This document shows positions 15,101 to 36,557 of a stretch of 64,000 bases of DNA, piece after piece; position 1 is the stretch's first letter, and each line of letters begins with the position of its first letter. The notes beneath the pieces are model-generated. The model worked only from the letters and a program-made list of their open reading frames with translations. It did not search any database and was not told the origin of the DNA. Location of the stretch: positions 62,001 through 126,000 of IMG/VR virus record IMGVR_UViG_3300027710_000011; one strand, written 5' to 3'. Position numbers and translations under genes: made by a program.

Positions 15101-16396
15101 GCGACGGGCTTTAGCCCTGAATCTACACCACTGAGCACTCTGATCACAGCAGACGTAGCGACGGGCTTCATTGTTAGCGAAACGGCTCTCAGCGAGATTA
15201 TCGTTGGTGAGACCGCTAACGGGTTCTCTGCACAGACTACAGCGCTCTCAGCGTTGATTACGGACGTCGCAGACGGCTTTGTGCGTGGTGAAAGTGAACT
15301 GACTAGCTTCATTGCCGACAAGGCAGATGGCTTCGTCTTTACACCTGGTCAGCTGGAAGTGCTGATTGGTAACGTTGCAACCGGTTTCGTACCGGAAACA
15401 ACTGACCTGTCTGCAATGATCGGTGACGTTGCAACCGGCTTCGTCTTTACGCCTGGTCTGATCAGTGATCTGTTTGTTGAGATTGCTGATGGCTTTGCTC
15501 CTGGTACTAGCGACATCGCTACGTTCTTTGCAGATGTTGCTGACGGCTTTGCTGTCGGCACAACGGTTCTGTCGACACTCATCGCTGATAAGGCCGATGG
15601 TTTCGTGGCGGCCGCAACTGATCTGTCAAGCTTGGTCGCAAACGTTGCTGACGGTTTCGTCTACACCGAGAACGACCTGACGAACGTGATCGCTGACAAG
15701 GCAGACGGGTTTGTTGCTGAAACAACAGACATTAATGGCTTGTTCGCTAGCAATGTGTTGGATGGCTTCGATAGCGTTCACACCACGATTGCCACAATGA
15801 TCTCTGACGTCGCTTCTGGCTTCGTCTGGAGTGAACGTGCTCTTAGCGAGCTGATTGTCCCTGATGTCCTGGACGGCTTCGACACTGGCGAGCAAACGCT
15901 CAATAGCGTGATTGCTGACAAGGTTGATGGCTTCCTGGCCACACCTGATGCAGACGGTCAATTGACTAACGCACTCTTCGTATTGCGTCCTGCAGATACA
16001 CAGTGGGCTGACGGTACCGTTATCGATGGTCGTATTGTTGAGAACATGCTTGTTCCAACCAGTCAAGATACGTGGGAAACTTTGCCCGCAACTTGGTCTG
16101 AATGGAATACGTGGCTGAGCAATCCGAACCCGATTGTCGAGTACGAAGAAGTAATTGACCTGGGTCAAGTCCGCACTGTTCGCTTGCGTGTTGATGCTGC
16201 TATCAATACAGCAACGACGGAAGGATGGGAAGCTAGGTACGTTACCAGCCTTGACGGAGTTGATTGGGGCAATGAAACATCGTGGCGTGATTTCCCAGGC
16301 AATAACGTAACAACGCGTTACGTGAAGGTCAAATGGGCCGCTCTCGGTACCTTCGCTACATTGTTGTCGCCAATGCTGACTGTTTACGAAAATTAA
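12119..16396 (+). CDS. Large virion structural / fibre-like protein with ~19-aa acidic tandem repeats
   Basis: 1425 aa; N-terminal domain with G..dvhY.Rl motif typical of phiKZ-like virion proteins; roughly 55-60 L..LI.D.A.GF repeats; distinct C-terminal domain. Confidence 0.75.
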   Translation: MPSNTTKPYGGLSRDRLTQLINDFNNTNRVEGVDFIYGVPVAHTGPNGENTKITLTPLPDTIYDGPVDVHYSRLRLNVLEFLPEGFIRAAVIKDFPFWIHSVLPEINAALGLNLDASEVVNTHYEGPQSTYRLEIVPSASVAWRPSFYDFHAVLGVELTDSFFTDIADGFIWSGNALEDVLPRDYLEGFVAETTELSVVITGEVANGFAPRVTQLSEIIPVNKLDGFAAALYELERAIPTDKLDGFVLTPGKLEDLIGPKALGFVAETSPLASFIPDVADGFVWTLSSLADFFPSNVMGGFELTPGVISSFFPDKLDGFAATTTSLHTLINDVADGFDRFSTNLGTLIADKADGFDPVFFSIPSAFNSDILDGFVVAERELGEFYPSNVLDGFAKSESNFAGFFPSDVVDGFVYTPGDLAAFFANKADGFIWTERELGELIADTADGFIRPEVELSTLIYKDQAEGFVPNTTELSEVIVQDVATGFVRTDNELSNLFTDVASGFALTPRELSELFVDQASGFIVSDTNLSEILADVLNGFVRTPTLLEQVISDVATGFDAITYTLEEKFNSDILNGFVETFSDLERLIDDFANGFAYTPMPLGQMFGDIGLGFDIVPTNLSELIGDVATGFEVQDSTIGTFFQDVADGFVLTENTLSAVFEDQALGFVPQTTGLTEVIPGHVMGGFSPSTTELAELIVTDVADGFIPRTTALDDLIANVASGFTLTEGDLQDLIATDVMDGFTPETTELSVLFDDAANGFVYTEGDIGQLITDTADGFVWTASDIAGFFSDSADGFVLTEGNLASLFVDAANGFSRTESSLTVFISDLADGFTPVVVALSDLIADKADGFAPFEPDLNSLIADKADGFVLTPGEVENLFSDVMDGFVPETTLIDTLFVTDVARGFTAETSALGTFLQDTADGFVWTPTDIDSKFVFDVVEGFVWTESSLDSFITADVLDGFVASVTPLSDMVTADVLDGFIAQTTALSELISNVATGFSPESTPLSTLITADVATGFIVSETALSEIIVGETANGFSAQTTALSALITDVADGFVRGESELTSFIADKADGFVFTPGQLEVLIGNVATGFVPETTDLSAMIGDVATGFVFTPGLISDLFVEIADGFAPGTSDIATFFADVADGFAVGTTVLSTLIADKADGFVAAATDLSSLVANVADGFVYTENDLTNVIADKADGFVAETTDINGLFASNVLDGFDSVHTTIATMISDVASGFVWSERALSELIVPDVLDGFDTGEQTLNSVIADKVDGFLATPDADGQLTNALFVLRPADTQWADGTVIDGRIVENMLVPTSQDTWETLPATWSEWNTWLSNPNPIVEYEEVIDLGQVRTVRLRVDAAINTATTEGWEARYVTSLDGVDWGNETSWRDFPGNNVTTRYVKVKWAALGTFATLLSPMLTVYEN
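12620..15940 (+). repeat. Degenerate ~57-nt (19-codon) coding tandem repeat
   Basis: GAC/GAT-GGN-TTY (D-G-F) recurs about every 57-60 nt. Confidence 0.85.
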
Positions 16397-22801: not shown

Positions 22802-22902
22802 AATGGTGATATGTCGTTAAAACAATCTAGGATCAAAGTGTATTGTGTGTACATCTCTCTACATGAGAGTAAAGATTTTTATTTTGGCTAGGAGGCCTAG
22901 CG

Positions 22903-24939
22903 ATGGCTAACATTGTTACACGAGCCCTTGGCTTCGTGGATGTGTCTGAAGACGAGAAATACATCACAATCGGCGGTGTGAAGGCTGAGAATATCGGTAA
23001 GGACATTCTCCGCATGTGGGGAACGAATCGCATTGAGCAACACATGTTCAATGAGATTGGTGGACGCGTTATCAGGTTCCCAAAGTTCTTTGGTCCTGAG
23101 GTGCATTACATCCTCAGCAAGATTTTGAACAACAAGAAGGTCGTTACAAGTCGTGGAAGTATCAAGGACGCTTTGGCTCTCCTTGAACAAAACACTTGGA
23201 TGAAACGCATCACGCAAGAGTACGACCCTATTATTGATTTGGATGCCGTCAAGCTGTTCAATAAGACGCCGATGCCGCACCAGATTAATTTCTTCCAGAT
23301 GTATAGTCATCGTACGCAATCGTACGGACTGAACGGCTATCTCCTGTCCGCTGGCGCTGGCACTGGTAAGACACTGATGGCACTCATCTTGTCCGAAATG
23401 CTGCATGCTGACTACAAGGTGATTGTCTGTCCAAAGAATGCTGCTTACCGAGTGTGGGTAACTTCTTTGGCTGAAGAATACAAAGATCCTCGCAAGGCTT
23501 GGGTAATCGCAGACGGTAAGGCTTACGAAGGTCAGAAGTACATTGTCTGTCATTACGAAGGTTTGGAAAAGCTCAAGGCCATTGCTGGCCGCCTTTCCGG
23601 ACGCGTGATCATCCCGCTTGATGAGTCTCACAATTTGAACAGTGACGATTCCTTGCGGACTCAATACTTCATCGACATCTGTCGCTCCATCCGTAACGTA
23701 CACGTGCTGTGGATGTCGGGTACACCAGTGAAAGCTCTTGGGTACGAAAGCATTCCACTGTTGCGCTCCATTGATCCGCTCTTCACCGATGAAGTGGAAG
23801 CGCGGTTCAAGAAGATCTATGGGCGTGATGCCACAAAGGCTTTGGACATCTTGCGTCAACGTATCGGCATGATTTCTTTCCACGTGGAAAGCTCTGCGGT
23901 TGTGACAAATGAGACGACGACTCACAATCGGATGATCAGTATCCCGAACGGTAAGATATACACGTTGGATGCTGTGCGTACCGAGATGCAGAAGTTCATT
24001 GAAACTCGTCTGAAATTCTACTTGGGCGAGAGCAAGAGTTTCAAGAAAACTTATGAGCGAGCGCTTGATATCTACGAAGACACGATCAAGGATAATGGCC
24101 TGCTGTCTAAAGACAGTGAAGAACGTCGTGCATTCAAGACGTACAAGCGCTACATCGAGCTGATCTCTTCCGGCTTTGATCCAATGAGTATGGCTAAGGA
24201 AGCCAAGTATTGCAATCATTTCGAGAAGAACATCATTGCTCCTACTTTGCCAAAAGACTTGAAGAAGGCTTTCATGAGCGCCAAGTCTGTGGTGAAGTAT
24301 CCGCAGCTTAAGGTACTTGGTGAAGCACTCGGTGGTGTTCTGAGCAAGAAGCGTGTTCAATGTCACTTGGACATGATTCCGCATATGGGACTAGAAAAGA
24401 TCATCAACGCGGCTTCGAAGAAGACCATCATCTTCTCGAGTTACGTTGAGGTGGTGGATGCAATCACGAAGTACCTGAAGGGTAAGGGTTTCAATCCCAT
24501 TGCCGTACACGCAAGTAGTGGTCAGGAACTCTCAGCATCCGTTAACCAGTTCTTCAAAGATCCGAATCTCAATCCGTTGGTGGCGACTTTCCAATCGCTA
24601 TCGACAGCAGTTCCGATTATCTGCGCGAACTGTACTGTGTTCACGAACATGCCGTTCCGTGAATACGAGATTACACAAGCTCGTGCTCGCACGAATCGTT
24701 TGGGTCAAGATACTGCTGTTGAGTACTACAACACGTACCTTGACACTGGTAAAGAGCCCAACGTCTCCACCCGCTCACGTGACATCCTGGAATGGTCGCG
24801 CCAACAAGTTGCAGCCATCCTTGGCCAAGACTATGGCGGCACTATTACAGCTGAAATGGTGAACTCGATGGAGAGTTTGACAGAGGACTACACTCCTTTC
24901 GAGATCAGTCTCGCTATGGAGGAATACGCAGACTTTTAA
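22903..24939 (+). CDS. SNF2-like (SF2) helicase
   Basis: PMPHQ, SAGAGTGKT, VCPK, IPLDESH, MSGTP, IFSSY and QARARTNRLGQ motifs. Confidence 0.88.
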   Translation: MANIVTRALGFVDVSEDEKYITIGGVKAENIGKDILRMWGTNRIEQHMFNEIGGRVIRFPKFFGPEVHYILSKILNNKKVVTSRGSIKDALALLEQNTWMKRITQEYDPIIDLDAVKLFNKTPMPHQINFFQMYSHRTQSYGLNGYLLSAGAGTGKTLMALILSEMLHADYKVIVCPKNAAYRVWVTSLAEEYKDPRKAWVIADGKAYEGQKYIVCHYEGLEKLKAIAGRLSGRVIIPLDESHNLNSDDSLRTQYFIDICRSIRNVHVLWMSGTPVKALGYESIPLLRSIDPLFTDEVEARFKKIYGRDATKALDILRQRIGMISFHVESSAVVTNETTTHNRMISIPNGKIYTLDAVRTEMQKFIETRLKFYLGESKSFKKTYERALDIYEDTIKDNGLLSKDSEERRAFKTYKRYIELISSGFDPMSMAKEAKYCNHFEKNIIAPTLPKDLKKAFMSAKSVVKYPQLKVLGEALGGVLSKKRVQCHLDMIPHMGLEKIINAASKKTIIFSSYVEVVDAITKYLKGKGFNPIAVHASSGQELSASVNQFFKDPNLNPLVATFQSLSTAVPIICANCTVFTNMPFREYEITQARARTNRLGQDTAVEYYNTYLDTGKEPNVSTRSRDILEWSRQQVAAILGQDYGGTITAEMVNSMESLTEDYTPFEISLAMEEYADF

Positions 24940-25254: not shown

Positions 25255-25338
25255 TAACCATTATCTTGTGTGAACAAATGTCTAATTACTTGGAAGTAGC
25301 TAGATACGACCACCCTTCTACACGTCTCAGGAAACAAC

Positions 25339-27036
25339 ATGAAACATCTGCCGCAAATTCTCGCCCAACAGCGCGCTCAAGCCCAATTCGCCATCGCCGG
25401 CGTTCCGTCTTCGCAATTGAGCGTTGCTCAAGAAGGCATCGCTCAAGAAGGCTTCGTGGACGGCTTCAAGGACTTCTTCACGCACCAGGCCACCACGAGT
25501 GACTTGGCTATCGTGCGCAAGGCCGCTTCGACCATGGCTGAATACAAGGTCGGTCTGACTTCCACTCGTCAGTTCGTCAACAACAACAACATGGCAGCGC
25601 TGCGCTACCTGTTCAAAGAAGATCAGCTGACCGGCAACCTGGTGGGTGACATCAATCACGACGTCAAGACCGTCGGCATGGTCAACGACGTTCTGCGCAA
25701 CATCGTTGAACTGCTGAAGAAGTCCAAGCCTGAAGACCGCAACAACGAAATCGAGAACGGCCTGATCAGCGTCCTGAAGGAAGCACGTGTCCACCTGGAC
25801 GACGTCGCCATGCTGGGCAACTACTACTTCTCGTTCGGCGCCCGCGGCACCGGAGATATGCTTGGTAACCATATCGACGAAGACATCAAGGCGAAGCTTC
25901 GCTTGGGCAACAACCTCACCGAAGCTGCTGTCGGCCTGGTCTTCTACGCTCTGGACAAGAAGAAGGCCGACGGTCTCTTCCCCAAGATCAACGAGAAGAT
26001 GGACTTCGACCTGAACGCTTTCAAGTCGGCAACTACTGCCTACGCAAAAATGCTGGGCCAGTCGGCTGCTTTGATCGAAGAGTTCATTGGCGAATACAAG
26101 CGCAGCAAGCGTCACGACAGCAAGCACGTTCGTCACGTTCTGCGCTACGGCCACAACGTTTGCGGCGTGTTGGTCGCCATCGCTTCGGTGACTCAGCCTT
26201 TCCTGAACTACATGCGCTCGCAGCTGAAGACTGGCGACGTCGCCATGGAAGGCTTCACTGACTCCGTCAAGAACGGTGTCAATCTGCTGAAGAGCAAATT
26301 CTCGCCCAATGACGAGACGAAGGCCAAGGCACAGATCGAGGTCTTGACCAAGCTCAAAGACGACGCTGAGCAACTGAAGAAGTACATCTCTTCGGGCGCT
26401 GACATCAAGTCGACATCGGTCAAGTTGACGCAAGCTGCCAAGAACTTCCCGGTGAGCGCGCAGACGCCTGACGAGCTGGTGCGCAACTTGTCCGCTTGGC
26501 GCAAGCAGACGGCTGCTGAGGTGACACGCATCTCCAAACTGACCGACAAGGCTGAAGTGGAATCCGCCATCGCCAAGATGAAGGAACAAGCCAAGGTCAA
26601 GGGCAAGATCGCTGACAACATGGTCTTCACGAAGGACGCGTGCTTGAAGCTGCTGTCGGAGATGATCGCATTGATCGATCTGAGCGTTCAGACCTGCAAG
26701 CGCAGTCTGGAGTTGAAGACGGAAGCCGGCGAAGTCAAGCCAAGCATGGAATCCATGTACATCGCCATGGAAAGCATGGAGATGACCATCGCTATGGAAG
26801 GCTTCTGGTCGAAAGTATTCGGCTACTACCTGCTGATCACCGGCTATGCCAGCTGGTTCTACGCCATCATCGTCGCTTGCTGGACTGTGTTCATGATCCT
26901 CACTGGTGCCGGTGTGTTCGCAGTACTGTTTACCGCAGGCGCTGCTGGCGTCAACTGGTTCCTCGGCAGCTTGTTTGTCGAAGCCGGTCGCAAGATGATC
27001 GACGACAACCAGGACGATGGCGAATATCGTTCCTAA
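25339..27036 (+). CDS. Internal head (ejected) protein with multiple A/S-x-E protease sites and hydrophobic C-terminus
   Basis: AQE-G twice, AME-G twice, SME/AME cluster; highly biased codons; C-terminal TM-like helices. Confidence 0.75.
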   Translation: MKHLPQILAQQRAQAQFAIAGVPSSQLSVAQEGIAQEGFVDGFKDFFTHQATTSDLAIVRKAASTMAEYKVGLTSTRQFVNNNNMAALRYLFKEDQLTGNLVGDINHDVKTVGMVNDVLRNIVELLKKSKPEDRNNEIENGLISVLKEARVHLDDVAMLGNYYFSFGARGTGDMLGNHIDEDIKAKLRLGNNLTEAAVGLVFYALDKKKADGLFPKINEKMDFDLNAFKSATTAYAKMLGQSAALIEEFIGEYKRSKRHDSKHVRHVLRYGHNVCGVLVAIASVTQPFLNYMRSQLKTGDVAMEGFTDSVKNGVNLLKSKFSPNDETKAKAQIEVLTKLKDDAEQLKKYISSGADIKSTSVKLTQAAKNFPVSAQTPDELVRNLSAWRKQTAAEVTRISKLTDKAEVESAIAKMKEQAKVKGKIADNMVFTKDACLKLLSEMIALIDLSVQTCKRSLELKTEAGEVKPSMESMYIAMESMEMTIAMEGFWSKVFGYYLLITGYASWFYAIIVACWTVFMILTGAGVFAVLFTAGAAGVNWFLGSLFVEAGRKMIDDNQDDGEYRS

Positions 27037-27109
27037 GTTCTTCTGAACTGTTAAAAGACCGAGTGGAAACACTCGGTCTTTTAATTTGTCACACAACAGG
27101 AAACAAAAT

Positions 27110-27955
27110 ATGGGTACCAATACTCAAACGCTTGTGTTGCCAACGCAGCAAGAAGCTATTGCCATGGAAGGTATCAAAGACACGCTCAAAGATGCCTGGG
27201 GCGCTCTGGTGAAGAAGTTCAATCCTACGGACCATGAAGCAATCATGGCTCGTATGGAAAAGCTCTCGAAAGTTCGTGTTGACCTTATCAAGCTGAAACA
27301 ACAAATCAGCATGGGTAAGGACGACGGTCAGGTGACTGCGAACATCACGCGCTTTACTGCACACTTGCCTGTGACGGCCGATACAGGTGAGCAGCTTGTC
27401 AAAGAGCTGGCTATGCAGCGTAAACGCATTCATGCCGTGGTTGTGGCTGCCGAGCATGCAAACACGCCGGAATCCATCAAGACGGTTCGGGAGCAAATGC
27501 TCTTGGAGCTCTCAAAGAAAGGCAACGTCTCCAAAGACATCATCTTCACCAAGAAGGTGATTCTGCAAGTGCTGGATGAAACCATCGCTTTGCTGGATGT
27601 TGTTAAGGACGCGGGTGGTGCGTACAACAAGTGCCACGAGAAAGCCAAGACTTCTGGAAGCTTGGCTACAGAGTCCTACCTCAACGGCCTGGCTTTGGAA
27701 AGCTATGAAGATACGCTGGAAATAGCCCTAGAAGGCCTTGTGAGCGCCATCGTTGGCCTGACTGCACTCCTGGCCTCTATCACTGCTCGCGTGATGATGT
27801 ACTTCGCCTGGGTGATGGCAATTGGCGCTCTTCTGACCGGACAGTTCGCTGCAGCCTTTGGTTTGTTTATCGCTGCTGAAGTTCTGGAATGGATCAGTCA
27901 AGCTGGTCTGAATTATTCCAATGTCCAGCTGAACGGCGGTGAAGAAGAGCATTGA
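27110..27955 (+). CDS. Internal head protein paralogous to the second half of 25339..27036
   Basis: IAME-G, ATE, ALE-S, ALE-G sites; alignable domain; hydrophobic tail. Confidence 0.75.
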   Translation: MGTNTQTLVLPTQQEAIAMEGIKDTLKDAWGALVKKFNPTDHEAIMARMEKLSKVRVDLIKLKQQISMGKDDGQVTANITRFTAHLPVTADTGEQLVKELAMQRKRIHAVVVAAEHANTPESIKTVREQMLLELSKKGNVSKDIIFTKKVILQVLDETIALLDVVKDAGGAYNKCHEKAKTSGSLATESYLNGLALESYEDTLEIALEGLVSAIVGLTALLASITARVMMYFAWVMAIGALLTGQFAAAFGLFIAAEVLEWISQAGLNYSNVQLNGGEEEH

Positions 27956-28174: not shown

Positions 28175-30793
28175 ATGTTGTCTATCCTAATTAAGCGCGA
28201 CGGAACTCGCGAACCATTGATGGCAGAAAAAGTCAATGGGTGGGGTGAATGGGCGGCCGCTAATCTCGGAGATACCGTAGATTGGACTGCCGGCGTTATG
28301 AGTGCTGTGGCTTCTTTGCCCGAAGTTGCCCATAGCCAAGACTTGCAGCACGCTTTGATTCGTTACTTCTTGAATCTGGGCACGTCTGGTGGTCAGCGCA
28401 TGGCAGGACGTCTGTATGCGGCGACGGTCCACAAAGACATGTTCGGCAAAGCCTACATGCCGACGATTTGGAACGTGCATCAGCAGCTGCTCAACGCCGG
28501 CTTTATGGTCAAGCTGGATTACTCGGATGAAGAATACGCCGAGTTGCAAAGCGTGATCGATCATGAGCGCGATTTCGACTACATGCACACCCAGCTGTAT
28601 CAAATCCGCTACAAGTACTCGCTGCGCAACCAACTGACGGGTACTGAATACGAAAGCCCTCAATTCGTGTTCATGCGTATGGCCATGGCTTTGGCTGAAG
28701 ACCAACCAAAGCATCGTCGTATGAAGGATGCGAAGAAGTGGTACAACTACTTCTCCCTGAACAAGATCAACGCTCCGACGCCGAACTACACCAATCTGGG
28801 CACCAAGCTCAACGGTTACGCTTCGTGCTGTCTGTACACCGTTGATGACACTGCTGACTCTTTGGCAGTGGGCGACCACATTGCGTACAAGATGACTGTC
28901 ATGTCGGCCGGCATTGGCAACATCTTGATGACTCGCTCCATTCTGGATCCCGTGCGCGGTGGTTTGTTCAAGCATCGCGGCAAGCTGCCTTACCTGCGCT
29001 CCATGCAAGGCGCAGTCACTGCCAACGTGAAGAACGGCCGCAACGGCGCATGCACATCGTCCTTCGTGGCGTTCGATCCTGAGATCGATACGTTGCAGCA
29101 GTTGAAGAATCCCATGACGGTTTCTGACAAACAAATCCGCGGGATGGATTACAACATGCAAGGCAACAAGTTCCTTGGTCGCAAAGCAGCTGCCAATGAA
29201 GATGTGTTCTTGTTCAACATCTTCACGGCTCCTGACCTCTTTGCCGCTTTCTACGGCAAGGATCTGAACAAGTTCATCGAGCTGTACAACAAGTACGAAG
29301 CCGATCCGAACTTCAAGAAGGTTTACAAGTCCGCTCGTGAGATCATCATCAATACCGAGAACGAGGCTTACGAAACCGGCCGTGCGTACTTGTCCTTCAT
29401 GGACGAGATCAACTACCACACGCCGTACAAGGATCCGATCAACACATCCAACTTGTGTGTTGAAATCACGGAACCCACGCACGCGTACCAGAACATGATT
29501 GATCTGTACACCAACGGCCCAGTTGGTTACATCGAGATTCGTGTGATTGGCAGCGATGAGCCGATGCGCATGAAAGCCCCTGACGCCGTGTATCTGGTTG
29601 ATCACGAAGAATGGGAAGCTGCGCAGAACCTGATTCCTGGCGTGATGTTCCGTAAGCTCGGCGAAGATCGTGTTTACACGGTGACCGAGATTATCGACGT
29701 CAAGAAAGAACCTGAAGTGGCCATGTGCTCTTTGGGTGCCATCGTCAAACCCAATGTGACTGACGACGAATACGAGGACGTGATGTATTACACGCTCCTC
29801 ATGATCGACAAGTGCATTCACAAGTCCGATTACCCGCTGGCTCACGTCGGCTACACCGCCAAGGCTCGTATGGCTGCCGGTGTGGGGATCATGAGTTTGG
29901 CTCACCATCTGGCGAAGCTGGGTCTGGACTATACCGGCGAAGCTGGTAAGCGTGAAATCCACAAGGTGTTCGAAACGCACATGTACTACGCTATCCGTGC
30001 TTCTTTGAAGCTGGGTAAAGAGCTGGGCAATGCACCGTGGATCCACCGTACCAAGTGGGCTGAAGGTTGGGTTCCTACTCATACGGCCAACAAGCGTGTT
30101 CAGGAGATCGTTCCTGGCGGCTTTGTCAAGCAGTACGACTGGGATGCGCTGAGCAAAGAGATCAAGGCTAACGGCGGTATCCGCAACTCTGCCTTGGTTG
30201 CACACATGCCTGGCGAATCCAGCTCCAAAGCGTCTGGTGGTCTGAACAGCGTGTACCCTGCACGCGATACGTCCCTCATCAAGACGGACAACGACATCAC
30301 GACGTACTGGACTGTTCCGGACAGCAGCTTGTATTACCAACCGGCATGGGAAGTTCCGACCAAGGACATGATCGAAGATTACTCGATCATGCAACTTTGG
30401 ACCGACCAAGCTATCTCGGCAGACGAATATCGCAAGATCGAAGGTGCTGAGAAGGTCGGCACCGATGAGATGTTGCAGAACTACTTCCTTCGTTGCAAGT
30501 ACGGCCAGAAGACTCGTTACTACATGAACACCAAGACTTCCAAAGCGGTCAAGCTCGATCGCGCAGAAACTGCGTGTGGTGTAGAAACGAGTACCAGTGG
30601 CGTTCATGTGGAGAACATGATTGCTGAGTCCAAAGAAAACTGGAACGGCGGTCCTGTTCATGAAGGCTGGGCAAGTAACGATGCTCCTGCGCCGGACATC
30701 GCGCATCGTCCACCGACAATTAGTAGCGGTGACGATAGCGTCTACAACACAGAAGCTTCGGCTGGCTGCGAAGGCGGCTTCTGCAGTCTGTAA
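28175..30793 (+). CDS. nrdA: Ribonucleotide reductase class Ia alpha subunit
   Basis: PTP, YASCCLY, SNLCVE, AMCSLG, GVGIMS, HMPGESSS, KTRYY and C-terminal CEGGFC. Confidence 0.96.
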   Translation: MLSILIKRDGTREPLMAEKVNGWGEWAAANLGDTVDWTAGVMSAVASLPEVAHSQDLQHALIRYFLNLGTSGGQRMAGRLYAATVHKDMFGKAYMPTIWNVHQQLLNAGFMVKLDYSDEEYAELQSVIDHERDFDYMHTQLYQIRYKYSLRNQLTGTEYESPQFVFMRMAMALAEDQPKHRRMKDAKKWYNYFSLNKINAPTPNYTNLGTKLNGYASCCLYTVDDTADSLAVGDHIAYKMTVMSAGIGNILMTRSILDPVRGGLFKHRGKLPYLRSMQGAVTANVKNGRNGACTSSFVAFDPEIDTLQQLKNPMTVSDKQIRGMDYNMQGNKFLGRKAAANEDVFLFNIFTAPDLFAAFYGKDLNKFIELYNKYEADPNFKKVYKSAREIIINTENEAYETGRAYLSFMDEINYHTPYKDPINTSNLCVEITEPTHAYQNMIDLYTNGPVGYIEIRVIGSDEPMRMKAPDAVYLVDHEEWEAAQNLIPGVMFRKLGEDRVYTVTEIIDVKKEPEVAMCSLGAIVKPNVTDDEYEDVMYYTLLMIDKCIHKSDYPLAHVGYTAKARMAAGVGIMSLAHHLAKLGLDYTGEAGKREIHKVFETHMYYAIRASLKLGKELGNAPWIHRTKWAEGWVPTHTANKRVQEIVPGGFVKQYDWDALSKEIKANGGIRNSALVAHMPGESSSKASGGLNSVYPARDTSLIKTDNDITTYWTVPDSSLYYQPAWEVPTKDMIEDYSIMQLWTDQAISADEYRKIEGAEKVGTDEMLQNYFLRCKYGQKTRYYMNTKTSKAVKLDRAETACGVETSTSGVHVENMIAESKENWNGGPVHEGWASNDAPAPDIAHRPPTISSGDDSVYNTEASAGCEGGFCSL

Positions 30794-30841
30794 CCAACCG
30801 GGAGGGCCTGAGTGCCCTCCCACCTCTGAGATACCACAAGC

Positions 30842-31948
30842 ATGTTAGAAAAATCAATCTTCAACATTGGTAAGTCCGATTACCGTGGCCATCCCAGTTT
30901 GTTCCTGGGTCAAGAAGCAGGTCTCTTCGACACTGTGAACAAACAGTTCCCAAAGGTTTGGGATAACTACAAGAACATGAAGTCCCTTGACTGGGACGAG
31001 CTTGAATTCGATTTCAAGTCATGCAATACTGAGTTCAAGTCACGTCCTGCAGGAATGACTCGTCGGATGATCAGCACGCTGGGCTGGCAATGGGAAGGTG
31101 ATTCCGTTGCATCCCGTACCGTGCTGCCTATCATGGCACCTTTCATCTCTGCCCCGGAGTTGCAAGCTGCTTGGGGTCGCATCACTGATAATGAAGTGCT
31201 GCACGCTGCCACCTATTCGGAAATCGTTCGCTACTCGTTCGATAACCCGCATGAAGTGCTCACTGAAGTCTTGAAGATCAAGGAATCTCTGTCGCGTTTG
31301 AAGACCGTTTCTGACGTGATGGCCAAGGTCTATCGTGTTTCTCACGAATACGCATTGGGCATGCGTGAGAACAATCAAGACACGTACAACCACATCTACC
31401 TCTTTGTGGTTGCGCTGTTGTGCTTGGAACGCATTCAGTTCATGGGTTCGTTCGCAATCACCTTCGCTATTGGTGAAGTCGGTGCGTTCATGCCTATCGT
31501 GAAAGCTGTTCAGCGTATCGCTCAAGATGAGCTGGAAGTTCACGTTGATCTGAACAAGATCATTTTGGCCAACGAGCACAAGACTGAACGCGGTCGCATT
31601 GCTCGTAAGGAAACTCTGTCACAAGTCCGCGCAATGGTTCGCGAATGCTTGGGTGCAGAACAAGCCTGGGTGGACTACCAAGATCTGGATCACGATCCCC
31701 TCGTGGGTCTGAATGGTCGTTTGCTGCGCGAATGGAACTGCTTGTCGGCTGGCGACGTCTACGACTCTTTGGAACTCCTGCCTGATTCGGATCTGGTGAT
31801 CCCGAAGAAGAACCCAATTGGCTTCATGACCAACTGGCTGGACATGTCCAAGACGCAAGCTGCTGTGCAAGAACAGCAGAACGCGCAGTACAAGGTCAAC
31901 GTCATCACTCGCAATGATGATGGTAAGATCTACGCTGGTGATTTCTGA
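30842..31948 (+). CDS. nrdB: Ribonucleotide reductase class Ia beta subunit
   Basis: WEGDS, DNEVLHAATY, LERIQFMGSF and QDELEVH di-iron and tyrosyl motifs. Confidence 0.95.
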   Translation: MLEKSIFNIGKSDYRGHPSLFLGQEAGLFDTVNKQFPKVWDNYKNMKSLDWDELEFDFKSCNTEFKSRPAGMTRRMISTLGWQWEGDSVASRTVLPIMAPFISAPELQAAWGRITDNEVLHAATYSEIVRYSFDNPHEVLTEVLKIKESLSRLKTVSDVMAKVYRVSHEYALGMRENNQDTYNHIYLFVVALLCLERIQFMGSFAITFAIGEVGAFMPIVKAVQRIAQDELEVHVDLNKIILANEHKTERGRIARKETLSQVRAMVRECLGAEQAWVDYQDLDHDPLVGLNGRLLREWNCLSAGDVYDSLELLPDSDLVIPKKNPIGFMTNWLDMSKTQAAVQEQQNAQYKVNVITRNDDGKIYAGDF

Positions 31949-31964
31949 CCAAAAAATAAAGATC

Positions 31965-31996
31965 ATAAAGGAGGAGCCCTTGGGCTCCTCCTTTAT
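31965..31996. terminator. Terminator between convergent genes
   Basis: ATAAAGGAGGAGCCC-tt-GGGCTCCTCCTTTAT. Confidence 0.85.
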
Positions 31997-32012
31997 TTTG
32001 TCGCTACTTAGT

Positions 32013-33800
32013 TCAATCCGGAATGTAATCAACGGCGTTCAAGACGCCTTTGATCAAACTGAACATAAACACAGCGCGCAGGCCGCAGCTCAAGAGGTCT
32101 GTCTTCAAACATTCCATCAACCGACCTCCTGTGATACGCGAGAAGTCGGAAATGGTTTTGACACCAATCTCGTCCAGCTGCGCAAAGTTAGCAGCGTACT
32201 GAACCGGCATATCGAAGATGTCGACCATCGGCATGCTCAGCGGAATCACATCCTTCGAAAGCGAAGGCTTGATTGGAAACGGCGTAATGAAACGTATGTC
32301 TTCCTTAAACGTGTAACCTTTATTCTTGATACGTCTAACAACGCAGTCAGCAGCCTCCATAGACAGACCCGACGCGATCATGAAAGTAGTCTCGTTCAAA
32401 CCGATGATGCTGCCAATCGATATAAAACTTCTGCTTACCAGATGCGAAGTCACACCGTCAGGCAGATTCAACTGATTTATCGGACGCAACCCAAGTGGAC
32501 GCGTGTCAGGCGTCTGAGTTGGTTCACGGTCTTGCTTGCGCAAGACCGAGTTCGCAGCCAGGCTTTCAAGACGCATCTCTGACTCACCGACACTTCGCAC
32601 TGGCGCTGCGCGCAAGAACGGATTGACGGTTTCCGTAGCCTTACTTACCAAGTCGGTTTCGCCAATGATGACATTGACCGGAACCCCGGAGCGCTGATGC
32701 AAATACGAACACTTATCCCCCGTCATCGGCAGATTCTTGAGCAGAGATTTTCCAGCATCAGTGATGATGCGTAGCGCTGCTTCAACATGACTCGGTGTTA
32801 CGTCCGAGTCTATTTGCAGATGATCAAGGATGGCGTCCAGCAGTTTCTTCTTCTGACGGAAGTTAGTCAGAAGATCTTGACTGCTACATTCGGCAGCTTG
32901 ACGCTTAGCATTTTCTGCCTGTTTAGCATACATGCCGTGTGGCGTTTGCATCCGGGTGCGCAAACGTTTGGTTGCTTCGATCTGCTGCGCCTGCATGAAC
33001 CATAAGTCCATAAAGCCAGTACTTTCAGGAGGGCGAACAACGGCAGCGGCGCGTGCTTCAGTTTCTTGCGCAATTATATTCATCACACGCCCGACATGAT
33101 CAGCGCTTTTGTTTGCCGTACTGACAACGATCTTCGGCGCCAAAGCGTTTTGTAAGTGATTGGCCAAAGCTACGTTCATTTGACTCAGAACAGAGCGCAC
33201 CTCAGCCGGCATGTCGTTCCAGCAAGTAATGGTCACGATGTCCTTGCTTTGGATCAACCTCTTATCAACCATCTGTACTTGCGCTGTACGAAAGGCTCTC
33301 TCTATGTTTTCATACTTAGGAGAACTAACGTAATGGCTCACGAAGCGATTCGCCAAATCGTGATACAGCTGGATAGTCCAAACGGGTTTGTTCTTAGCCA
33401 CAGCGTCTTCCTTTACGGCCTTTGGAGCCTTTGTTTTTGCCGGTGATGGAGTTGCGTTTGCCTTGACTGTTTTGGTTTTCTGATGGTGCTCCTTCAGTAC
33501 TTTACTGGCGCGAGCACCCAATCTTCCTTTCCACACATCCGTCTTGTACTTTGTTTTGTACTCACGCATCTCGTTGAAGTACGAAGCGTAGAGTTCCTTG
33601 CTAATGGGTTTTGGCGCATGACACAGCGCCTTGATCGTAACTCGGTGATCTTTGTGCAAGATTCCGAGTTTAATCATGTCGTCTTGTGCGAGGTTGAACG
33701 CATCCTGAATAATTAAGTCAGGTTTTGCTTTCACCTTTTCCACGAAAAGACGAGCACAAGCTTTCACTGCACCTTCTGTCCATTTTTGGATATTAGACAT
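32013..33800 (-). CDS. Multidomain protein with C-terminal RNA polymerase alpha-CTD-like domain(s)
   Basis: LRPINQLNL....SHL....FISIGSI......MIASGLS.EAAD.V..RIKNKG aligns with RpoA CTD. Confidence 0.6.
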   Translation of the reverse strand: MSNIQKWTEGAVKACARLFVEKVKAKPDLIIQDAFNLAQDDMIKLGILHKDHRVTIKALCHAPKPISKELYASYFNEMREYKTKYKTDVWKGRLGARASKVLKEHHQKTKTVKANATPSPAKTKAPKAVKEDAVAKNKPVWTIQLYHDLANRFVSHYVSSPKYENIERAFRTAQVQMVDKRLIQSKDIVTITCWNDMPAEVRSVLSQMNVALANHLQNALAPKIVVSTANKSADHVGRVMNIIAQETEARAAAVVRPPESTGFMDLWFMQAQQIEATKRLRTRMQTPHGMYAKQAENAKRQAAECSSQDLLTNFRQKKKLLDAILDHLQIDSDVTPSHVEAALRIITDAGKSLLKNLPMTGDKCSYLHQRSGVPVNVIIGETDLVSKATETVNPFLRAAPVRSVGESEMRLESLAANSVLRKQDREPTQTPDTRPLGLRPINQLNLPDGVTSHLVSRSFISIGSIIGLNETTFMIASGLSMEAADCVVRRIKNKGYTFKEDIRFITPFPIKPSLSKDVIPLSMPMVDIFDMPVQYAANFAQLDEIGVKTISDFSRITGGRLMECLKTDLLSCGLRAVFMFSLIKGVLNAVDYIPD

Positions 33801-33942
33801 GGTTGTATCTCCTTTTAGTTAAAATTTAAGAAAGTCTCAATTCACGCTCGTAATAGGTAATAGAAGTGAAACGTATTACGAGTATAAACAAAAACAAAGA
33901 ATAAAAGGAGGGAGTAATTCCCTCCTTTTATAACGTCTTATC

Positions 33943-34608
33943 TTAGACGTTGCCGTAACCCAGCTTGCGCCAGCGCTCGATGATCGAGTTTTCGAGCAAG
34001 TCATGCAACTTGTCCGAGTCGTTCAGATGAGCCGATGAGAACATCGTCAGTTTGTTGCTATCGTTGGCACCGATATTTGCGACGGCGTATACAGCAGCAG
34101 CAGAGACGGTGTTCTCGTCCAACTTTAGGAAATGGTGCTGGATAAATTTGCCGTCCTTGTTCGCCATCGTGATGGTGAAGCCAGGGTTCTTGAATTCAGA
34201 ACTGCTCTTGACCGGGTCATCCATGTTGATGATGGTTGTGACGCCCACGTAGTTCCCCTTGTGAGGATCTGGCTTTGGCAAGTACGAAGTCACAATCTTT
34301 TCCAGCGACGACATCAGGCGCTCGCGGAAGCGACGAGCGTTTTCTTGCTTGCCTTGGTTGTCATGCCTCACTGGTGTAGCAAAGAACAACTTGACTGCCG
34401 CTGCGAGACTTGCGATCTTGGGATCAGTGATGACGTCGTTATCGCCGTTGATGGCGTTGACAACTTCCAGCGTGATGTTATTTGCTTCGAACTGCATCAT
34501 CTCACGACCATTCGGCCAAGATAACGTGATCATGCCTGTGATGTAGGCGCGAATATGTTCGATGTCTTCTTTGGCGATGACGTATTTGATTGCTGGGAAC
34601 AAATCCAT
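33943..34608 (-). CDS. Hypothetical protein
   Basis: 221-aa ORF downstream of a GTGATATGT motif. Confidence 0.75.
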   Translation of the reverse strand: MDLFPAIKYVIAKEDIEHIRAYITGMITLSWPNGREMMQFEANNITLEVVNAINGDNDVITDPKIASLAAAVKLFFATPVRHDNQGKQENARRFRERLMSSLEKIVTSYLPKPDPHKGNYVGVTTIINMDDPVKSSSEFKNPGFTITMANKDGKFIQHHFLKLDENTVSAAAVYAVANIGANDSNKLTMFSSAHLNDSDKLHDLLENSIIERWRKLGYGNV

Positions 34609-34717
34609 GGTGATTCCTCTTTTTTACTGGTCTAGGACTGGTTATGTCCTGTTAGTGATATGTGTCTTCAAATTTTTTAATAGGGGAGTAGGGGAGTCCT
34701 AGGACTCCCCTACTTTC

Positions 34718-34963
34718 TTACGCCGTTACTTCTCTGCACTTGCCTTTGACTGCTTCAAAGATAACGTCATCGTCGGGACCTAGGAAAAGGAAACCCGCGT
34801 GATAATCACTCGAGTGATCTTCCCATGCACTGTGCGCTTCTTCCATCGAAATGGAATAACCGCGCACGGCACATATCTCGACAATACGACCAGCGTCTTC
34901 CAAGTCCACATCCGAAAGACATGCGGGCTCGTGATACGCTAAACGCTTCTTCAGATCAGCCAC
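34718..34963 (-). CDS. Hypothetical protein
   Basis: 81-aa acidic ORF. Confidence 0.65.
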   Translation of the reverse strand: MADLKKRLAYHEPACLSDVDLEDAGRIVEICAVRGYSISMEEAHSAWEDHSSDYHAGFLFLGPDDDVIFEAVKGKCREVTA

Positions 34964-36488
34964 CGTTGCTGGCCTTCAGCAGGCTGACCACGTCACGACC
35001 ACCAGTGGTGATGGTTCCGAGGTAAGTTGCCAGACCGGTGTTGAAGTTCACTTCAATGTACAAGACATTGCTGTTGGCAGTGTTGGTCACGGTCGCGTAA
35101 GCGCGATCGCTGAACATCTGGAAGCCGCTGGGAATGTAGCCCAGTGTGTCCAGATTCACCTTCACCAGATTGCCAGAGCTCAGATCTTGACGGATGAAGT
35201 TATTCATCGGCGCAGTCACGCAGTAAGCAAAGCCGGCCGAAACACGCGAGTACTTCGGCGAGACGCTCATCGGCGTGATCATTTCCAACACGTCACCAGC
35301 GTACGGCAAGTCCCACTTGTAGGTGGTAGGTGCCGCATAGATCGAGCTTTGCTGGGCCTTGGAGTAGTCCCAGTAGTTGCAGCGATCACCACCGATCACA
35401 GTGCCGCTGCGACCAGCGAAGCGAGTCATCGACTGCGGAGCTTGCACGTTCTTAGCCCAAGGCGCGGAGACGCCGTTGACCACGTCGACCACGGAGTTCG
35501 TGCCGTTTTGATAGGCAATGAATTCCTTGGCATCGCTCAGGACAATGCTGGTCGTGCAAGGCGTGCCGACGTTCTGGTTTGCATCGCGGATGATCTTGAA
35601 GGCGGTGTCACCCTTCTTGTAAATCATCAGGCCAGCGAACTGGCTTGCGTTGCCCACCAGATAGGTGCCGTCATAGGCCAGTTGGCCGCTGAAGTTGCCG
35701 GCCTTGCTGCACACAGGTTGCGTTGTCGCAGTCAGGTCAACACGTGCCACGCCGCCCTTGTTGTCGATCTGCAGTTCGCGAACCAGACCAGTGCTCTTGC
35801 TCAGATAGATCGCGTTGGACGAGGTGTTGAAACCTTCATCGCCCGCAGGGATCATGTCCGAGATGTCGCCGATCACGTCTTGGTTCAGAGCCACAGCTTG
35901 GCCGGTGGTGCCAAAGACCACGTAGTCGCCGGTGGTGTAGGTCAGGTTGCAGCTGGCGTCCACAGACGTGGGCACCGACATGTTGACCAGGGCATTTTGG
36001 TTGCCCATGTCCAACCACCACACGCTGTTGATCTTCACGCCGACGTTGGTGAAGTCGCACTTGACCTTGGATGCATCAGCCGTTGCGAACACAGGCGCCA
36101 TCGAGCCCAGCTTGCCACCTTGACCCAGCTTGGCAGACAGTTGCTGCGTAGCAGGAATGTTGGCAGGTGGGTAGGCCGGTTGGCACAGAGCCCCGCAGGC
36201 TTCAGCGTAGGCATTGCCGACCACGATGGTAGAGCTCTTGTTGAGGAAACGCTCCAGACGGTCCATCATCAAGGCCCCGACCTTTTGAGTGGGAGCCGTG
36301 GTGGCCAGAACGTCCTTGGTGCCCAAGCTCAGACCGGTCAGCGAGATGGCTTGTGGTCCAACAGGCGTCACAGGCGCAACAGGATCGGGCGTGTTGGGTG
36401 TGGAAGATCCGCCGCCTCCGCCGCCACCGCAAGCGGTGAGGACAATGGCTGCAGCAGCGATCAGAGAAGAATTGAAATGCTTTTTCAT
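34956..36488 (-). CDS. Large lipoprotein (possible beta-propeller)
   Basis: MKK..lipobox LTAC followed by poly-Gly and a Pro linker; beta-rich body. Confidence 0.8.
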   Translation of the reverse strand: MKKHFNSSLIAAAAIVLTACGGGGGGGSSTPNTPDPVAPVTPVGPQAISLTGLSLGTKDVLATTAPTQKVGALMMDRLERFLNKSSTIVVGNAYAEACGALCQPAYPPANIPATQQLSAKLGQGGKLGSMAPVFATADASKVKCDFTNVGVKINSVWWLDMGNQNALVNMSVPTSVDASCNLTYTTGDYVVFGTTGQAVALNQDVIGDISDMIPAGDEGFNTSSNAIYLSKSTGLVRELQIDNKGGVARVDLTATTQPVCSKAGNFSGQLAYDGTYLVGNASQFAGLMIYKKGDTAFKIIRDANQNVGTPCTTSIVLSDAKEFIAYQNGTNSVVDVVNGVSAPWAKNVQAPQSMTRFAGRSGTVIGGDRCNYWDYSKAQQSSIYAAPTTYKWDLPYAGDVLEMITPMSVSPKYSRVSAGFAYCVTAPMNNFIRQDLSSGNLVKVNLDTLGYIPSGFQMFSDRAYATVTNTANSNVLYIEVNFNTGLATYLGTITTGGRDVVSLLKASNGG

Positions 36489-36557
36489 GATGATTCCTAG
36501 AAGTCGAATTGAATGGAGAAACAAAAGAGAAGGGAGGGTTAGACCCTCCTCTAAGTT

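What the first reader, a model, noticed from the sequence alone, without database searches (positions are those of the whole stretch)
32013..32489. RNA polymerase alpha-CTD-like domain(s) at the end of a 595-aa phage protein
Seen: LRPINQLNLPDGVTSHLVSRSFISIGSIIGLNETTFMIASGLSMEAADCVVRRIKNKGYTF parallels E. coli RpoA [61 protein letters not shown]. A second, weaker copy follows (LDEIGVKTISDFSRIT). The DNA-binding R265/N268/GKKS residues are not conserved. Inference: a decoy that titrates host activators or NusA, or an accessory for the phage multisubunit RNAP, which lacks alpha subunits.
Basis: partly seen in the sequence, partly recalled or inferred. Interest (0 to 1): 0.62.

Follow-up and report, generated by a model that had tools for sequence, protein, structure and literature searches.

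The report
Possible helix-hairpin-helix tail on orphan phage protein
An orphan 595-residue protein of an uncultured phiKZ-like giant phage probably ends in two small helix-hairpin-helix modules, the first shaped like the C-terminal domain of the bacterial RNA polymerase alpha subunit. This rests on one language-model structure prediction, not on measurable sequence homology, and the function is unknown.

Summary
The ORF and the quoted peptides are real: window 32013-33800, minus strand, 595 aa, with the quoted stretch starting at residue 438. The gene is under purifying selection (dN/dS 0.27), has a strong ribosome-binding site, and sits between two hairpin terminators. Only one relative exists (82% identical) among 1.84 billion representative proteins.

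The likeness to E. coli alpha-CTD is not beyond chance by sequence. BLASTP gives E 0.74, the Pfam model PF03118 gives no hit, my own alpha-CTD HMM gives -1.6 bits, and hhalign gives P about 0.04-0.05. About 5% of random segments from this phage score as well.

AlphaFold2 failed twice (pLDDT 38 and 32). The ESM Atlas's own model gives the only positive evidence. For residues 432-506, 8 of 10 neighbour rows carry PF03118. For residues 516-595, the neighbours are DinB, NusA, a RecG-like helicase and alpha-CTD proteins, most of them known to contain helix-hairpin-helix modules.

The phage does encode a phiKZ-type alpha-less RNA polymerase. However, this protein is not its fifth subunit, and the nearest phages sharing that polymerase lack it.

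Best reading: a lineage-specific DNA-associated accessory protein with tandem (HhH)2 modules. The decoy and polymerase-accessory ideas remain untested.

The parts
32013..33800 (-). Whole gene with stop codon: 595-aa basic (pI 9.5) orphan protein, P0001
   Evidence: ORF list and translation. dN/dS 0.27 against the only relative, P0002/L122. No Pfam, PHROG, NCBIfam or PDB-sequence family.
32292..32501 (-). Module D1, residues 434-503: predicted alpha-CTD-like (HhH)2 domain, basic (pI 9.6). It contains a canonical helix-hairpin-helix motif starting at residue 473.
   Evidence: ESM Atlas structural neighbours: 8 of 10 rows carry PF03118 over residues 432-506. The HhH consensus pattern hits only here in the phage proteome (pattern written post hoc). 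Sequence tests are not significant. dN/dS 0.24.
32256..32291 (-). Pro-rich linker, residues 504-515, between the two modules
   Evidence: Read directly from the translation. Segment boundaries as used.
32016..32255 (-). Module D2, residues 516-595: predicted (HhH)2-type domain, acidic (pI 4.6), with a hydrophobic last helix
   Evidence: ESM Atlas neighbours are DinB (IMS_HHH), NusA, a RecG-like helicase and three PF03118 rows, TM by query 0.53-0.65. There is a weak Pfam SAM_EPH hit, E 0.095. BLASTP to RpoA CTD gives E 0.74 over this part. pI. dN/dS 0.25.
32502..32540 (-). Pro/Thr-rich hydrophilic tether, residues 421-433, ahead of D1
   Evidence: Composition (gravy -2.75). Read directly.
32541..32945 (-). 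Central region, residues 286-420, unknown fold. One weak lead to a rhodanese-like protein.
   Evidence: PDB 6mxv_A matches at E 0.0038 with the single sequence but only 0.072 with the two-sequence profile. Pfam Rhodanese was not hit. dN/dS 0.25.
32946..33155 (-). Hypervariable, indel-rich spacer, residues 216-285
   Evidence: 35% identity and a 22-residue length difference against P0002. A third variant in a sediment run also shows indels here.
33156..33389 (-). N-terminal repeat B, residues 138-215
   Evidence: Internal similarity to residues 6-70: Smith-Waterman 40, z 4.3, reached by 0.18% of shuffles; phmmer pairwise E 0.0011. dN/dS 0.16.
33390..33560 (-). Lys/Ala/Pro-rich basic linker, residues 81-137 (pI 10.3, 16 K+R in 57 residues)
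   Evidence: Composition. Read directly.
33561..33800 (-). N-terminal repeat A, residues 1-80, the most conserved part (97% identical to P0002, dN/dS 0.06)
33809..33814 (-). Shine-Dalgarno AAGGAG, 8 nt ahead of the ATG
   Evidence: Read directly.
33847..33882 (.). 12-nt inverted repeat (92% complementary, 12 nt between arms) carrying TATTAC(G) motifs, 47-82 nt upstream of the ATG. Candidate promoter or operator.
   Evidence: Nearly identical in the relative L122, with one change in the outer base of one arm. TATTAC is about 4-fold enriched in intergenic DNA genome-wide: 25 of 87 copies lie in the 7.3% of the genome that is intergenic.
33901..33931 (-). Upstream hairpin terminator (13-bp stem plus T-tract) that ends the preceding gene and isolates this one
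   Evidence: The relative differs in and beside the loop.
31965..31996 (-). Downstream hairpin terminator (14-bp stem plus T-tract), shared with the convergent RNR beta gene
   Evidence: The stem is kept through compensatory changes in L122.

Best explanation
The gene encodes a lineage-specific, DNA-associated accessory protein of a phiKZ-like jumbo phage. It is not an RNA polymerase alpha subunit homologue in the family sense.

Its last roughly 160 residues most likely form two (HhH)2 modules. Each hangs on a proline-rich tether. The first is basic and shaped like alpha-CTD. The second is acidic and of the generic type seen in NusA, DinB and alpha-CTD.

Inferred mechanism: the basic module, together with the Lys/Ala/Pro-rich linker at residues 81-137, contacts the DNA backbone without sequence preference, as most (HhH)2 modules do. 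The acidic module serves as a protein-contact surface, as the acidic (HhH)2 repeats of NusA do. The duplicated N-terminal domain supplies whatever specificity the protein has.

Shown: the gene is real, under selection and set between two predicted terminators; the protein is an orphan; the phage has an alpha-less multisubunit polymerase.

Inferred: the fold (one predictor only), DNA binding, and the division of labour between the two modules.
For: - Real gene: dN/dS 0.27 overall and 0.22 over the C-terminal 175 residues; SD AAGGAG; flanking hairpin terminators, the downstream one with compensatory stem changes in the relative.
- Fold: ESM Atlas neighbours of residues 432-506 are dominated by PF03118. 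Neighbours of 516-595 are DinB, NusA, a RecG-like helicase and alpha-CTD proteins. The nearest named clusters by language-model features are PF03118, HHH_5 and DUF4332. A canonical HhH motif at residue 473 is the only such match in 85,706 proteome residues, against 0.23 expected.
- Charge layout: D1 pI 9.6, D2 pI 4.6, linker 81-137 pI 10.3.
- Context: phiKZ-type polymerase genes are present.
Against: - All sequence-based tests for alpha-CTD or HhH homology are at chance level.
- The Pfam HHH_5 model finds the HhH domain of another ORF in this genome (C1:126767-126925) but not this protein. DUF4332 finds nothing.
- AlphaFold2 gave no usable model and drew strands where helices 2 and 3 should be.
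- The Atlas model has low global confidence (pLDDT 0.54, pTM 0.29), and its local confidence is unknown.
- TM values on domains of about 70 residues are weak evidence, and the HhH pattern was written after seeing the sequence.
- The alpha-CTD residues that touch DNA are absent.
- There is no experimental or expression data; no RNA run holds the locus.
Confidence: 0.45

Rival explanations
1. One reading: an alpha-CTD mimic. It either soaks up host factors that normally dock on alpha-CTD (activators, NusA AR2), or it serves the phage's alpha-less multisubunit RNA polymerase as a tethered upstream-DNA or factor-contact module.
For: Residues 432-506 are structurally closest to PF03118 proteins in the Atlas. 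The module sits on a flexible tether, as alpha-CTD does. The phage has a phiKZ-type polymerase, published as lacking alpha and omega (PMC4666361). In the related Ralstonia phages, unidentified extra factors were proposed to explain host-independent transcription (PMC5468394).
Against: There is no homologue in FLC9, FLC1-1B, RP12 or RSF1, which share the polymerase at 39-50% identity, so it cannot be a core accessory. The known extra subunit, gp68, has its own orthologue at C1:189848-191527. The gene is not near the polymerase block, which lies about 86 kb away. The DNA-contact residues of alpha-CTD are not kept. The host is unknown, so no partner could be named or tested.
Confidence: 0.12
2. 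There is no HhH or alpha-CTD domain. The likeness is a chance pattern in a helical orphan protein, which a language-model folder has pulled toward a common small fold.
For: Every alignment statistic is at chance level. BLASTP gives E 0.74. An unrelated ORF outscores this one. HMM scores are negative. hhalign P is 0.04-0.05 and 5% of random segments score as well. Pfam and the PDB sequence search are silent. AlphaFold2 shows no such fold. The service itself warns that TM over 0.5 means little for short stretches and that feature scores under 0.9 are leads only.
Against: The neighbour lists are family-specific, not a mix of small helical folds: 8 of 10 rows carry PF03118 for D1. Both modules return HhH-clan neighbours in separate structure searches of the same Atlas model. 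There is a canonical HhH motif at residue 473. Failure with only two sequences is normal for AlphaFold2 and is not evidence against the fold.
Confidence: 0.3
3. The protein is the promoter-specificity or fifth subunit of the phage non-virion polymerase, that is, the phiKZ gp68 or AR9 gp226 analogue.
For: Similar size (595 against 521 aa). The gp68 family is known to diverge fast (PMC4666361).
Against: phiKZ gp68 finds a different ORF (C1:189848-191527, E 1.2e-20) inside a block collinear with gp66-gp74, and does not find this ORF at E<=10. The PDB sequence search with this protein returned no polymerase chain.
Confidence: 0.02

Closest known systems
C-terminal domain of bacterial RNA polymerase alpha subunit (Pfam PF03118, RNA_pol_A_CTD)
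   Same: Predicted compact four-helix double-hairpin fold of about 70 residues on a flexible tether. Residues 432-506 have PF03118 proteins as their nearest structural neighbours. The L-R-P start and the I-G turn line up with E. coli residues 254-256 and 278-279.
   Different: It fails the family model. There is no alpha N-terminal dimerisation domain. R265, N268, K297 and K298 are not kept. It is followed by a second module. The host protein is a 595-aa phage orphan.
NusA C-terminal acidic repeats AR1 and AR2, tandem (HhH)2 domains (from my own knowledge of E. coli NusA)
   Same: Two (HhH)2-type modules in tandem at the C-terminus. The second module is acidic (pI 4.6) and has a NusA cluster among its structural neighbours.
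   Different: The first module is basic. There are no S1 or KH domains. No sequence similarity was found. The two modules are not recognisably duplicates of each other.
Generic DNA-backbone-binding (HhH)2 modules (Pfam HHH_5 PF14520, DUF4332 PF14229, DinB IMS_HHH)
   Same: Canonical h-x-x-h-x-G-h-[GS]-x-x-x-A-x-x-h-h motif at residues 473-488. Atlas feature and structure neighbours include these families.
   Different: The Pfam models do not detect it, although HHH_5 detects another ORF of the same genome.
phiKZ gp68, the non-homologous fifth subunit of the non-virion RNA polymerase
   Same: An orphan-like protein of similar size in a phiKZ-type phage.
   Different: Not an orthologue. gp68 maps to another ORF within the conserved gp66-gp74 block.

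Membership tests
RNA_pol_A_CTD (PF03118) | Scores over the Pfam gathering threshold (23.8 bits) | tested here: not met
   No hit at E<=10 on the protein or its pieces. No hit at E<=10 in the whole phage genome, while 14 of 14 control genomes ring. My own HMM from 69 RpoA CTDs gives -1.6 bits.
RNA_pol_A_CTD (PF03118) | Four-helix double helix-hairpin-helix fold | tested here: inconclusive
   The ESM Atlas model's neighbours are mostly PF03118, with TM 0.76 on a 66-aa member. AlphaFold2 was unusable at pLDDT 37.8 and 32.1.
RNA_pol_A_CTD (PF03118) | UP-element and DNA contact residues (E. coli R265, N268, G296, K298, S299) | tested here: not met
   In the ungapped register, R265 falls on G and N268 on S. 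The hairpin Gly is kept only with a 2-residue shift, and no Lys follows it.
Bacterial RNA polymerase alpha subunit (RpoA) | N-terminal dimerisation and assembly domain (PF01000, PF01193) ahead of the CTD | tested here: not met
   No Pfam or NCBIfam family on residues 1-430.
HhH clan, (HhH)2 modules (HHH_5 PF14520, DUF4332 PF14229) | Match to a clan member's profile | tested here: not met
   HHH_5 hits only C1:126767-126925, in another ORF. DUF4332 gives no hit.
HhH clan, (HhH)2 modules | Canonical hairpin motif h-x-x-h-x-G-h-G-x-x-x-A-x-x-h-h | tested here: met
   Residues 473-488 match, with Ser at the second Gly. This is the only match in 85,706 proteome residues against 0.23 expected from shuffles. 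The pattern was fixed after seeing the sequence.
phiKZ gp68 family (fifth nvRNAP subunit) | Sequence similarity to gp68 and position in the gp66-gp74 block | tested here: not met
   The gp68 orthologue is C1:189848-191527 (E 1.2e-20). The target ORF is not hit at E<=10.
Rhodanese-like domain (for residues 290-372) | Profile match and active-site Cys loop | tested here: inconclusive
   A single PDB chain, 6mxv_A, matches at E 0.0038, falling to 0.072 with the two-sequence profile. Gln stands where the Cys would be. Pfam Rhodanese was not hit.

The most novel reading that the evidence does not exclude
The protein is a trans-acting stand-in for the missing alpha-CTD of a phiKZ-type alpha-less RNA polymerase. 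On this reading, a tethered alpha-CTD-like module plus an acidic NusA-AR-like module recruits the phage polymerase, or a phage factor, to upstream DNA at a subset of promoters. This role would have arisen only in this groundwater phage lineage.
Probability: 0.06. Interest if true: 0.8.

Novelty: new member of a known kind. Interest (0 to 1): 0.33.

Why it matters
If the fold is real, alpha-CTD-like and (HhH)2 modules have been recruited into an orphan protein of a nucleus-forming-type giant phage whose own polymerase has no alpha subunit. That gives a concrete candidate to test for a phage-specific DNA-organising or transcription accessory factor. If the fold is not real, the case shows that a hand-spotted 18%-identity parallel can agree with a language-model fold and still fail every alignment statistic. 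Either way, the protein is one of many unexplained genes in a poorly sampled lineage of phiKZ-like phages from groundwater.

Tried and rejected
1. Looking for relatives to build an alignment. All searches below found nothing beyond one 82%-identical protein and the source contig:
- phage GenBank records, by DNA and tblastn
- IMG/VR
- the 5.8-billion word search, with the whole protein and with the C-terminal piece alone
- exhaustive phmmer against 1.84 billion representatives
- JGI metagenome contigs
- the four nearest annotated phages at E<=10

2. AlphaFold2 on residues 425-595 and on the full length gave pLDDT 37.8 and 32.1. No fold search was run on these models, because a low-confidence model gives meaningless matches.

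3. I did not fold the domain with real alpha-CTD sequences added to its alignment. That would have been circular.

4. The first collection of alpha-CTD sequences, from genome contigs, returned only near-identical Gammaproteobacteria. It was supplemented from 60 Pseudomonadota genomes.

5. The gp68 hypothesis was rejected by synteny.

6. The rhodanese lead for the central region weakened with a profile.

7. No paralogue of any domain exists in the phage proteome.

8. No RNA run holds the locus, so expression and timing could not be read.

9. Complex prediction was not used. The host is unknown, no binding claim is made, and orphan sequences without alignments would give no verdict.

10. A sigma-70 promoter scan found none in 31700-35200. 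This is expected for a phage that uses its own polymerases.

Full report
WHAT IS THERE. The finding lies at the 3' end of an ORF on the minus strand, window 32013-33800, 595 codons. So the coordinates and peptides are correct.

The window is part of a 276,772-bp virus record, C1:62001-126000. Its source contig is a JGI metagenome contig of the same length, from a subsurface metagenome.

IS IT A GENE. Yes.
- An AAGGAG ribosome-binding site sits 8 nt ahead of the ATG.
- The only relative, P0002, is 82% identical and comes from a 276,853-bp contig with the same neighbours.
- dN/dS against that relative is 0.27 overall: 0.06 for residues 1-80, 0.16 for 138-215, 0.25 for 286-420, and 0.24 and 0.25 for the two C-terminal modules. 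Residues 216-285 are saturated and indel-rich.
- The gene is boxed in by two strong hairpin terminators on its own strand, at 33931-33901 and 31996-31965. The downstream stem is kept in the relative through compensatory changes.
- It therefore looks like a single-gene transcription unit, with its promoter somewhere in 33801-33900.

WHAT PHAGE. Pfam RNA polymerase models hit three ORFs outside the window.
- The beta-like protein is 50% identical to that of Burkholderia phage FLC9. It is 43% identical to Ralstonia phages RP12 and RP31, 39% to RSF1 and RSL2, and 36-37% to the Pseudomonas phiKZ-like phages listed (PhiPA3 and others).
- phiKZ gp66, 67, 68, 69, 70, 71 and 74 each find one ORF, in the same order, at C1:182227-194238.
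- So this is a phiKZ-like jumbo phage with the non-virion polymerase, including its fifth subunit. That enzyme is published as having no alpha, omega or sigma counterpart (PMC4666361).

IS THE ALPHA-CTD LIKENESS MORE THAN CHANCE. By sequence, no. I fetched E. coli rpoA and compared.
- The Smith-Waterman raw score is 46 against 26.8 +/- 4.5 for shuffles (0.35% reach it). However, an unrelated 289-aa ORF of the same phage scores 49, so this ORF ranks second of 288.
- BLASTP gives E 0.74 and aligns the second module rather than the first.
- Pfam finds nothing at E<=10 on the whole protein or on five pieces, apart from three weak unrelated hits and a SAM_EPH hit at E 0.095 on residues 505-595.
- PF03118 run against the whole phage genome finds nothing at E<=10, while all 14 control genomes ring.
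- I built an HMM from 69 distinct RpoA CTDs. The region scores -1.6 bits.
- Profile-profile comparison gives P 0.038-0.052. In an empirical control, 5.3% of random 80-residue segments from other ORFs of this phage score at least as high as module 1.
- The HHH_5 and DUF4332 models also miss it, although HHH_5 finds another ORF of the genome.
- The PDB sequence search is silent.

STRUCTURE. AlphaFold2 needs an alignment, and only two sequences exist anywhere:
- exhaustive phmmer over 1.84 billion representatives found only P0002;
- word searches with the whole protein and with the C-terminal piece found nothing else;
- IMG/VR, phage GenBank records and JGI metagenomes found nothing else.

Both AlphaFold2 jobs failed, with pLDDT 37.8 for residues 425-595 and 32.1 for the full length. 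They count neither for nor against the fold.

The ESM Atlas holds this exact sequence with its own model (pTM 0.29, mean pLDDT 0.54).
- Restricted to residues 430-595, 8 of the 10 neighbour rows carry PF03118, all aligned on residues 432-506. They include a 66-residue alpha-CTD protein at TM 0.76 normalised on that protein.
- Restricted to residues 506-595, the neighbours are DinB (with its HhH), NusA, a RecG-like helicase and three PF03118 rows, at TM by query 0.53-0.65 over residues 512-595.
- By language-model features, the nearest named clusters are PF03118, HHH_5 and DUF4332, at 0.81-0.82, which the service rates as leads only.
- A canonical helix-hairpin-helix motif stands at residues 473-488. 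With a pattern I wrote after seeing it, it is the only match in the 85,706-residue proteome, against 0.23 expected.

I take the fold as probable, about 0.55-0.6, and not as shown. The two modules are not detectably similar to each other. 'Second copy' is therefore at best a fold-level statement.

THE REST OF THE PROTEIN.
- Residues 6-70 and 140-205 are a weak internal repeat: Smith-Waterman z 4.3, reached by 0.18% of shuffles, pairwise phmmer E 0.0011.
- Between them lies a Lys/Ala/Pro-rich linker with pI 10.3.
- Module 1 is basic (pI 9.6), module 2 is acidic (pI 4.6), and the whole protein has pI 9.5.
- Residues 290-372 give one marginal hit to a rhodanese-like PDB chain (E 0.0038), which weakens to 0.072 with a profile. 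I treat it as a lead only.
- No domain has a paralogue in the phage.
- The upstream neighbours on the same strand have no functional family assignment. The downstream neighbours, which are convergent, are ribonucleotide reductase alpha and beta.

FUNCTION. Neither could be tested directly, because the host is unknown and no RNA run holds the locus. Two results bear on the second idea.
- The known extra polymerase subunit, gp68, has its own orthologue elsewhere, so this protein is not that subunit.
- The phages that share the polymerase at 39-50% identity have no homologue of this protein, even at a per-genome E of 10. A core accessory would be expected to travel with the enzyme.

The published observation that RP12 and RP31 are rifampicin-insensitive while RSL2 and RSF1 are not, with unidentified extra factors proposed as the cause (PMC5468394), shows that lineage-specific transcription factors are plausible in this group. 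This protein, however, is not among the RP12 genes.

My best reading is a lineage-specific DNA-associated accessory protein. On this reading, the basic (HhH)2 module and the Lys-rich linker hold the DNA backbone, and the acidic module contacts a protein. This follows from what (HhH)2 modules generally do and from the charge layout. It is inference, at confidence 0.45.

The reading that there is no HhH fold at all keeps 0.30. The alpha-CTD mimic reading keeps 0.12.

COMPARISON WITH KNOWN FAMILIES. The protein fails the PF03118 membership test on score, on the DNA-contact residues and on domain context. It passes only the predicted fold, and that only inconclusively. I therefore call it alpha-CTD-like in predicted shape and not a family member.

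The Atlas neighbours show that alpha-CTD-like modules fused to unrelated domains (WG repeats, CoxG, TPR) are common. One neighbour cluster, mostly viral and without a Pfam family, also resembles this region. The kind is therefore known, and this would be a new, very divergent member.

VERDICT. Interest is modest.

Noticed in passing
G000:C1:182227-194238 (outside the window): A block collinear with phiKZ gp66-gp74, including orthologues of the non-virion RNA polymerase subunits gp68, gp71-73 and gp74. It places this uncultured groundwater virus among phiKZ-like jumbo phages. Its beta subunit is closest to Burkholderia phage FLC9 (50% identity).
   Followed up: yes
window 33847-33882; also C1:70081-70092, 73371-73406, 141837-141853 and others: TATTAC(G) is about 4-fold enriched in intergenic DNA (25 of 87 copies lie in the 7.3% of the genome that is intergenic). 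It sits 15-90 nt upstream of about nine genes and often follows a terminator hairpin directly. Ahead of the target gene it occurs in tandem within a 12-nt inverted repeat. It is a candidate promoter or operator class.
   Followed up: partly
window 34657 (C1:96657) and about 15 other intergenic sites, e.g. C1:42668, 84808, 186461, 191619, 211404, 232587, 254198: A highly conserved motif, GTGATATGT-nn-CTGAAA, always on the + strand and often 5-120 nt ahead of + strand genes. It contains TATG, the phiKZ late-promoter core. The copy at window 34657 points antisense to its flanking minus-strand genes.
   Followed up: partly
genome-wide, e.g. window 31965-31996 and 33901-33931: Terminator hairpins share a stereotyped ATAAA-GGAGG...CCTCC-TTTAT stem and are very often followed by GC (giving TTTATGC) or TACG. 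This suggests combined terminator-promoter modules.
   Followed up: partly
window 28187-30823 (-), 25327-27120 (-), 22897-24384 (-), 35187-36500 (+) and others: Very long antisense 'shadow' ORFs lie over real genes, for example 878 aa opposite RNR alpha, in a 50% GC genome. Near-total avoidance of TTA, CTA and TCA codons explains them: 0, 1 and 0 in the 872 codons of RNR alpha. The target gene is less biased (6 such codons, GC3 0.54).
   Followed up: yes
window 34956-36524 (-): A 522-aa ORF starts with a signal peptide and a lipobox-like L-T-A-C, followed by a Gly run and a Pro/Thr-rich stretch. It is probably a phage-encoded lipoprotein. It has no functional family hit; two PHROGs of unknown function match only its signal-peptide region.
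   Followed up: no
window 32541-32945 (residues 286-420 of the target): A marginal match of residues 290-372 to both repeats of a rhodanese-like PDB chain (6mxv_A, E 0.0038), with Gln where the catalytic Cys would be. It weakens to E 0.072 with a two-sequence profile.
   Followed up: partly
window 31900-33950 in public runs: Identical short contigs of this gene occur in other groundwater and drinking-water metagenomes. A sediment metagenome holds a diverged variant in which residues ~397-523 (the tether, module 1 and the linker) are replaced by 360 unlike letters, while module 2 stays about 88% identical at DNA level.
   Followed up: partly
window 12119-16396 (+): A 1425-aa protein whose first ~150 residues (DUF7941) match small proteins that sit just upstream of tail-fibre genes in RP12, RSF1 and FLC1-1B. 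Here the module appears fused to a long C-terminal extension, so this is possibly the tail fibre itself.
   Followed up: no
G000:C1:128509-128805 (-): A 98-aa ORF gives the best, still insignificant, score of the proteome against my alpha-CTD HMM (8 bits, HMM positions 45-78). It has a TATTACG motif 89 nt upstream.
   Followed up: no
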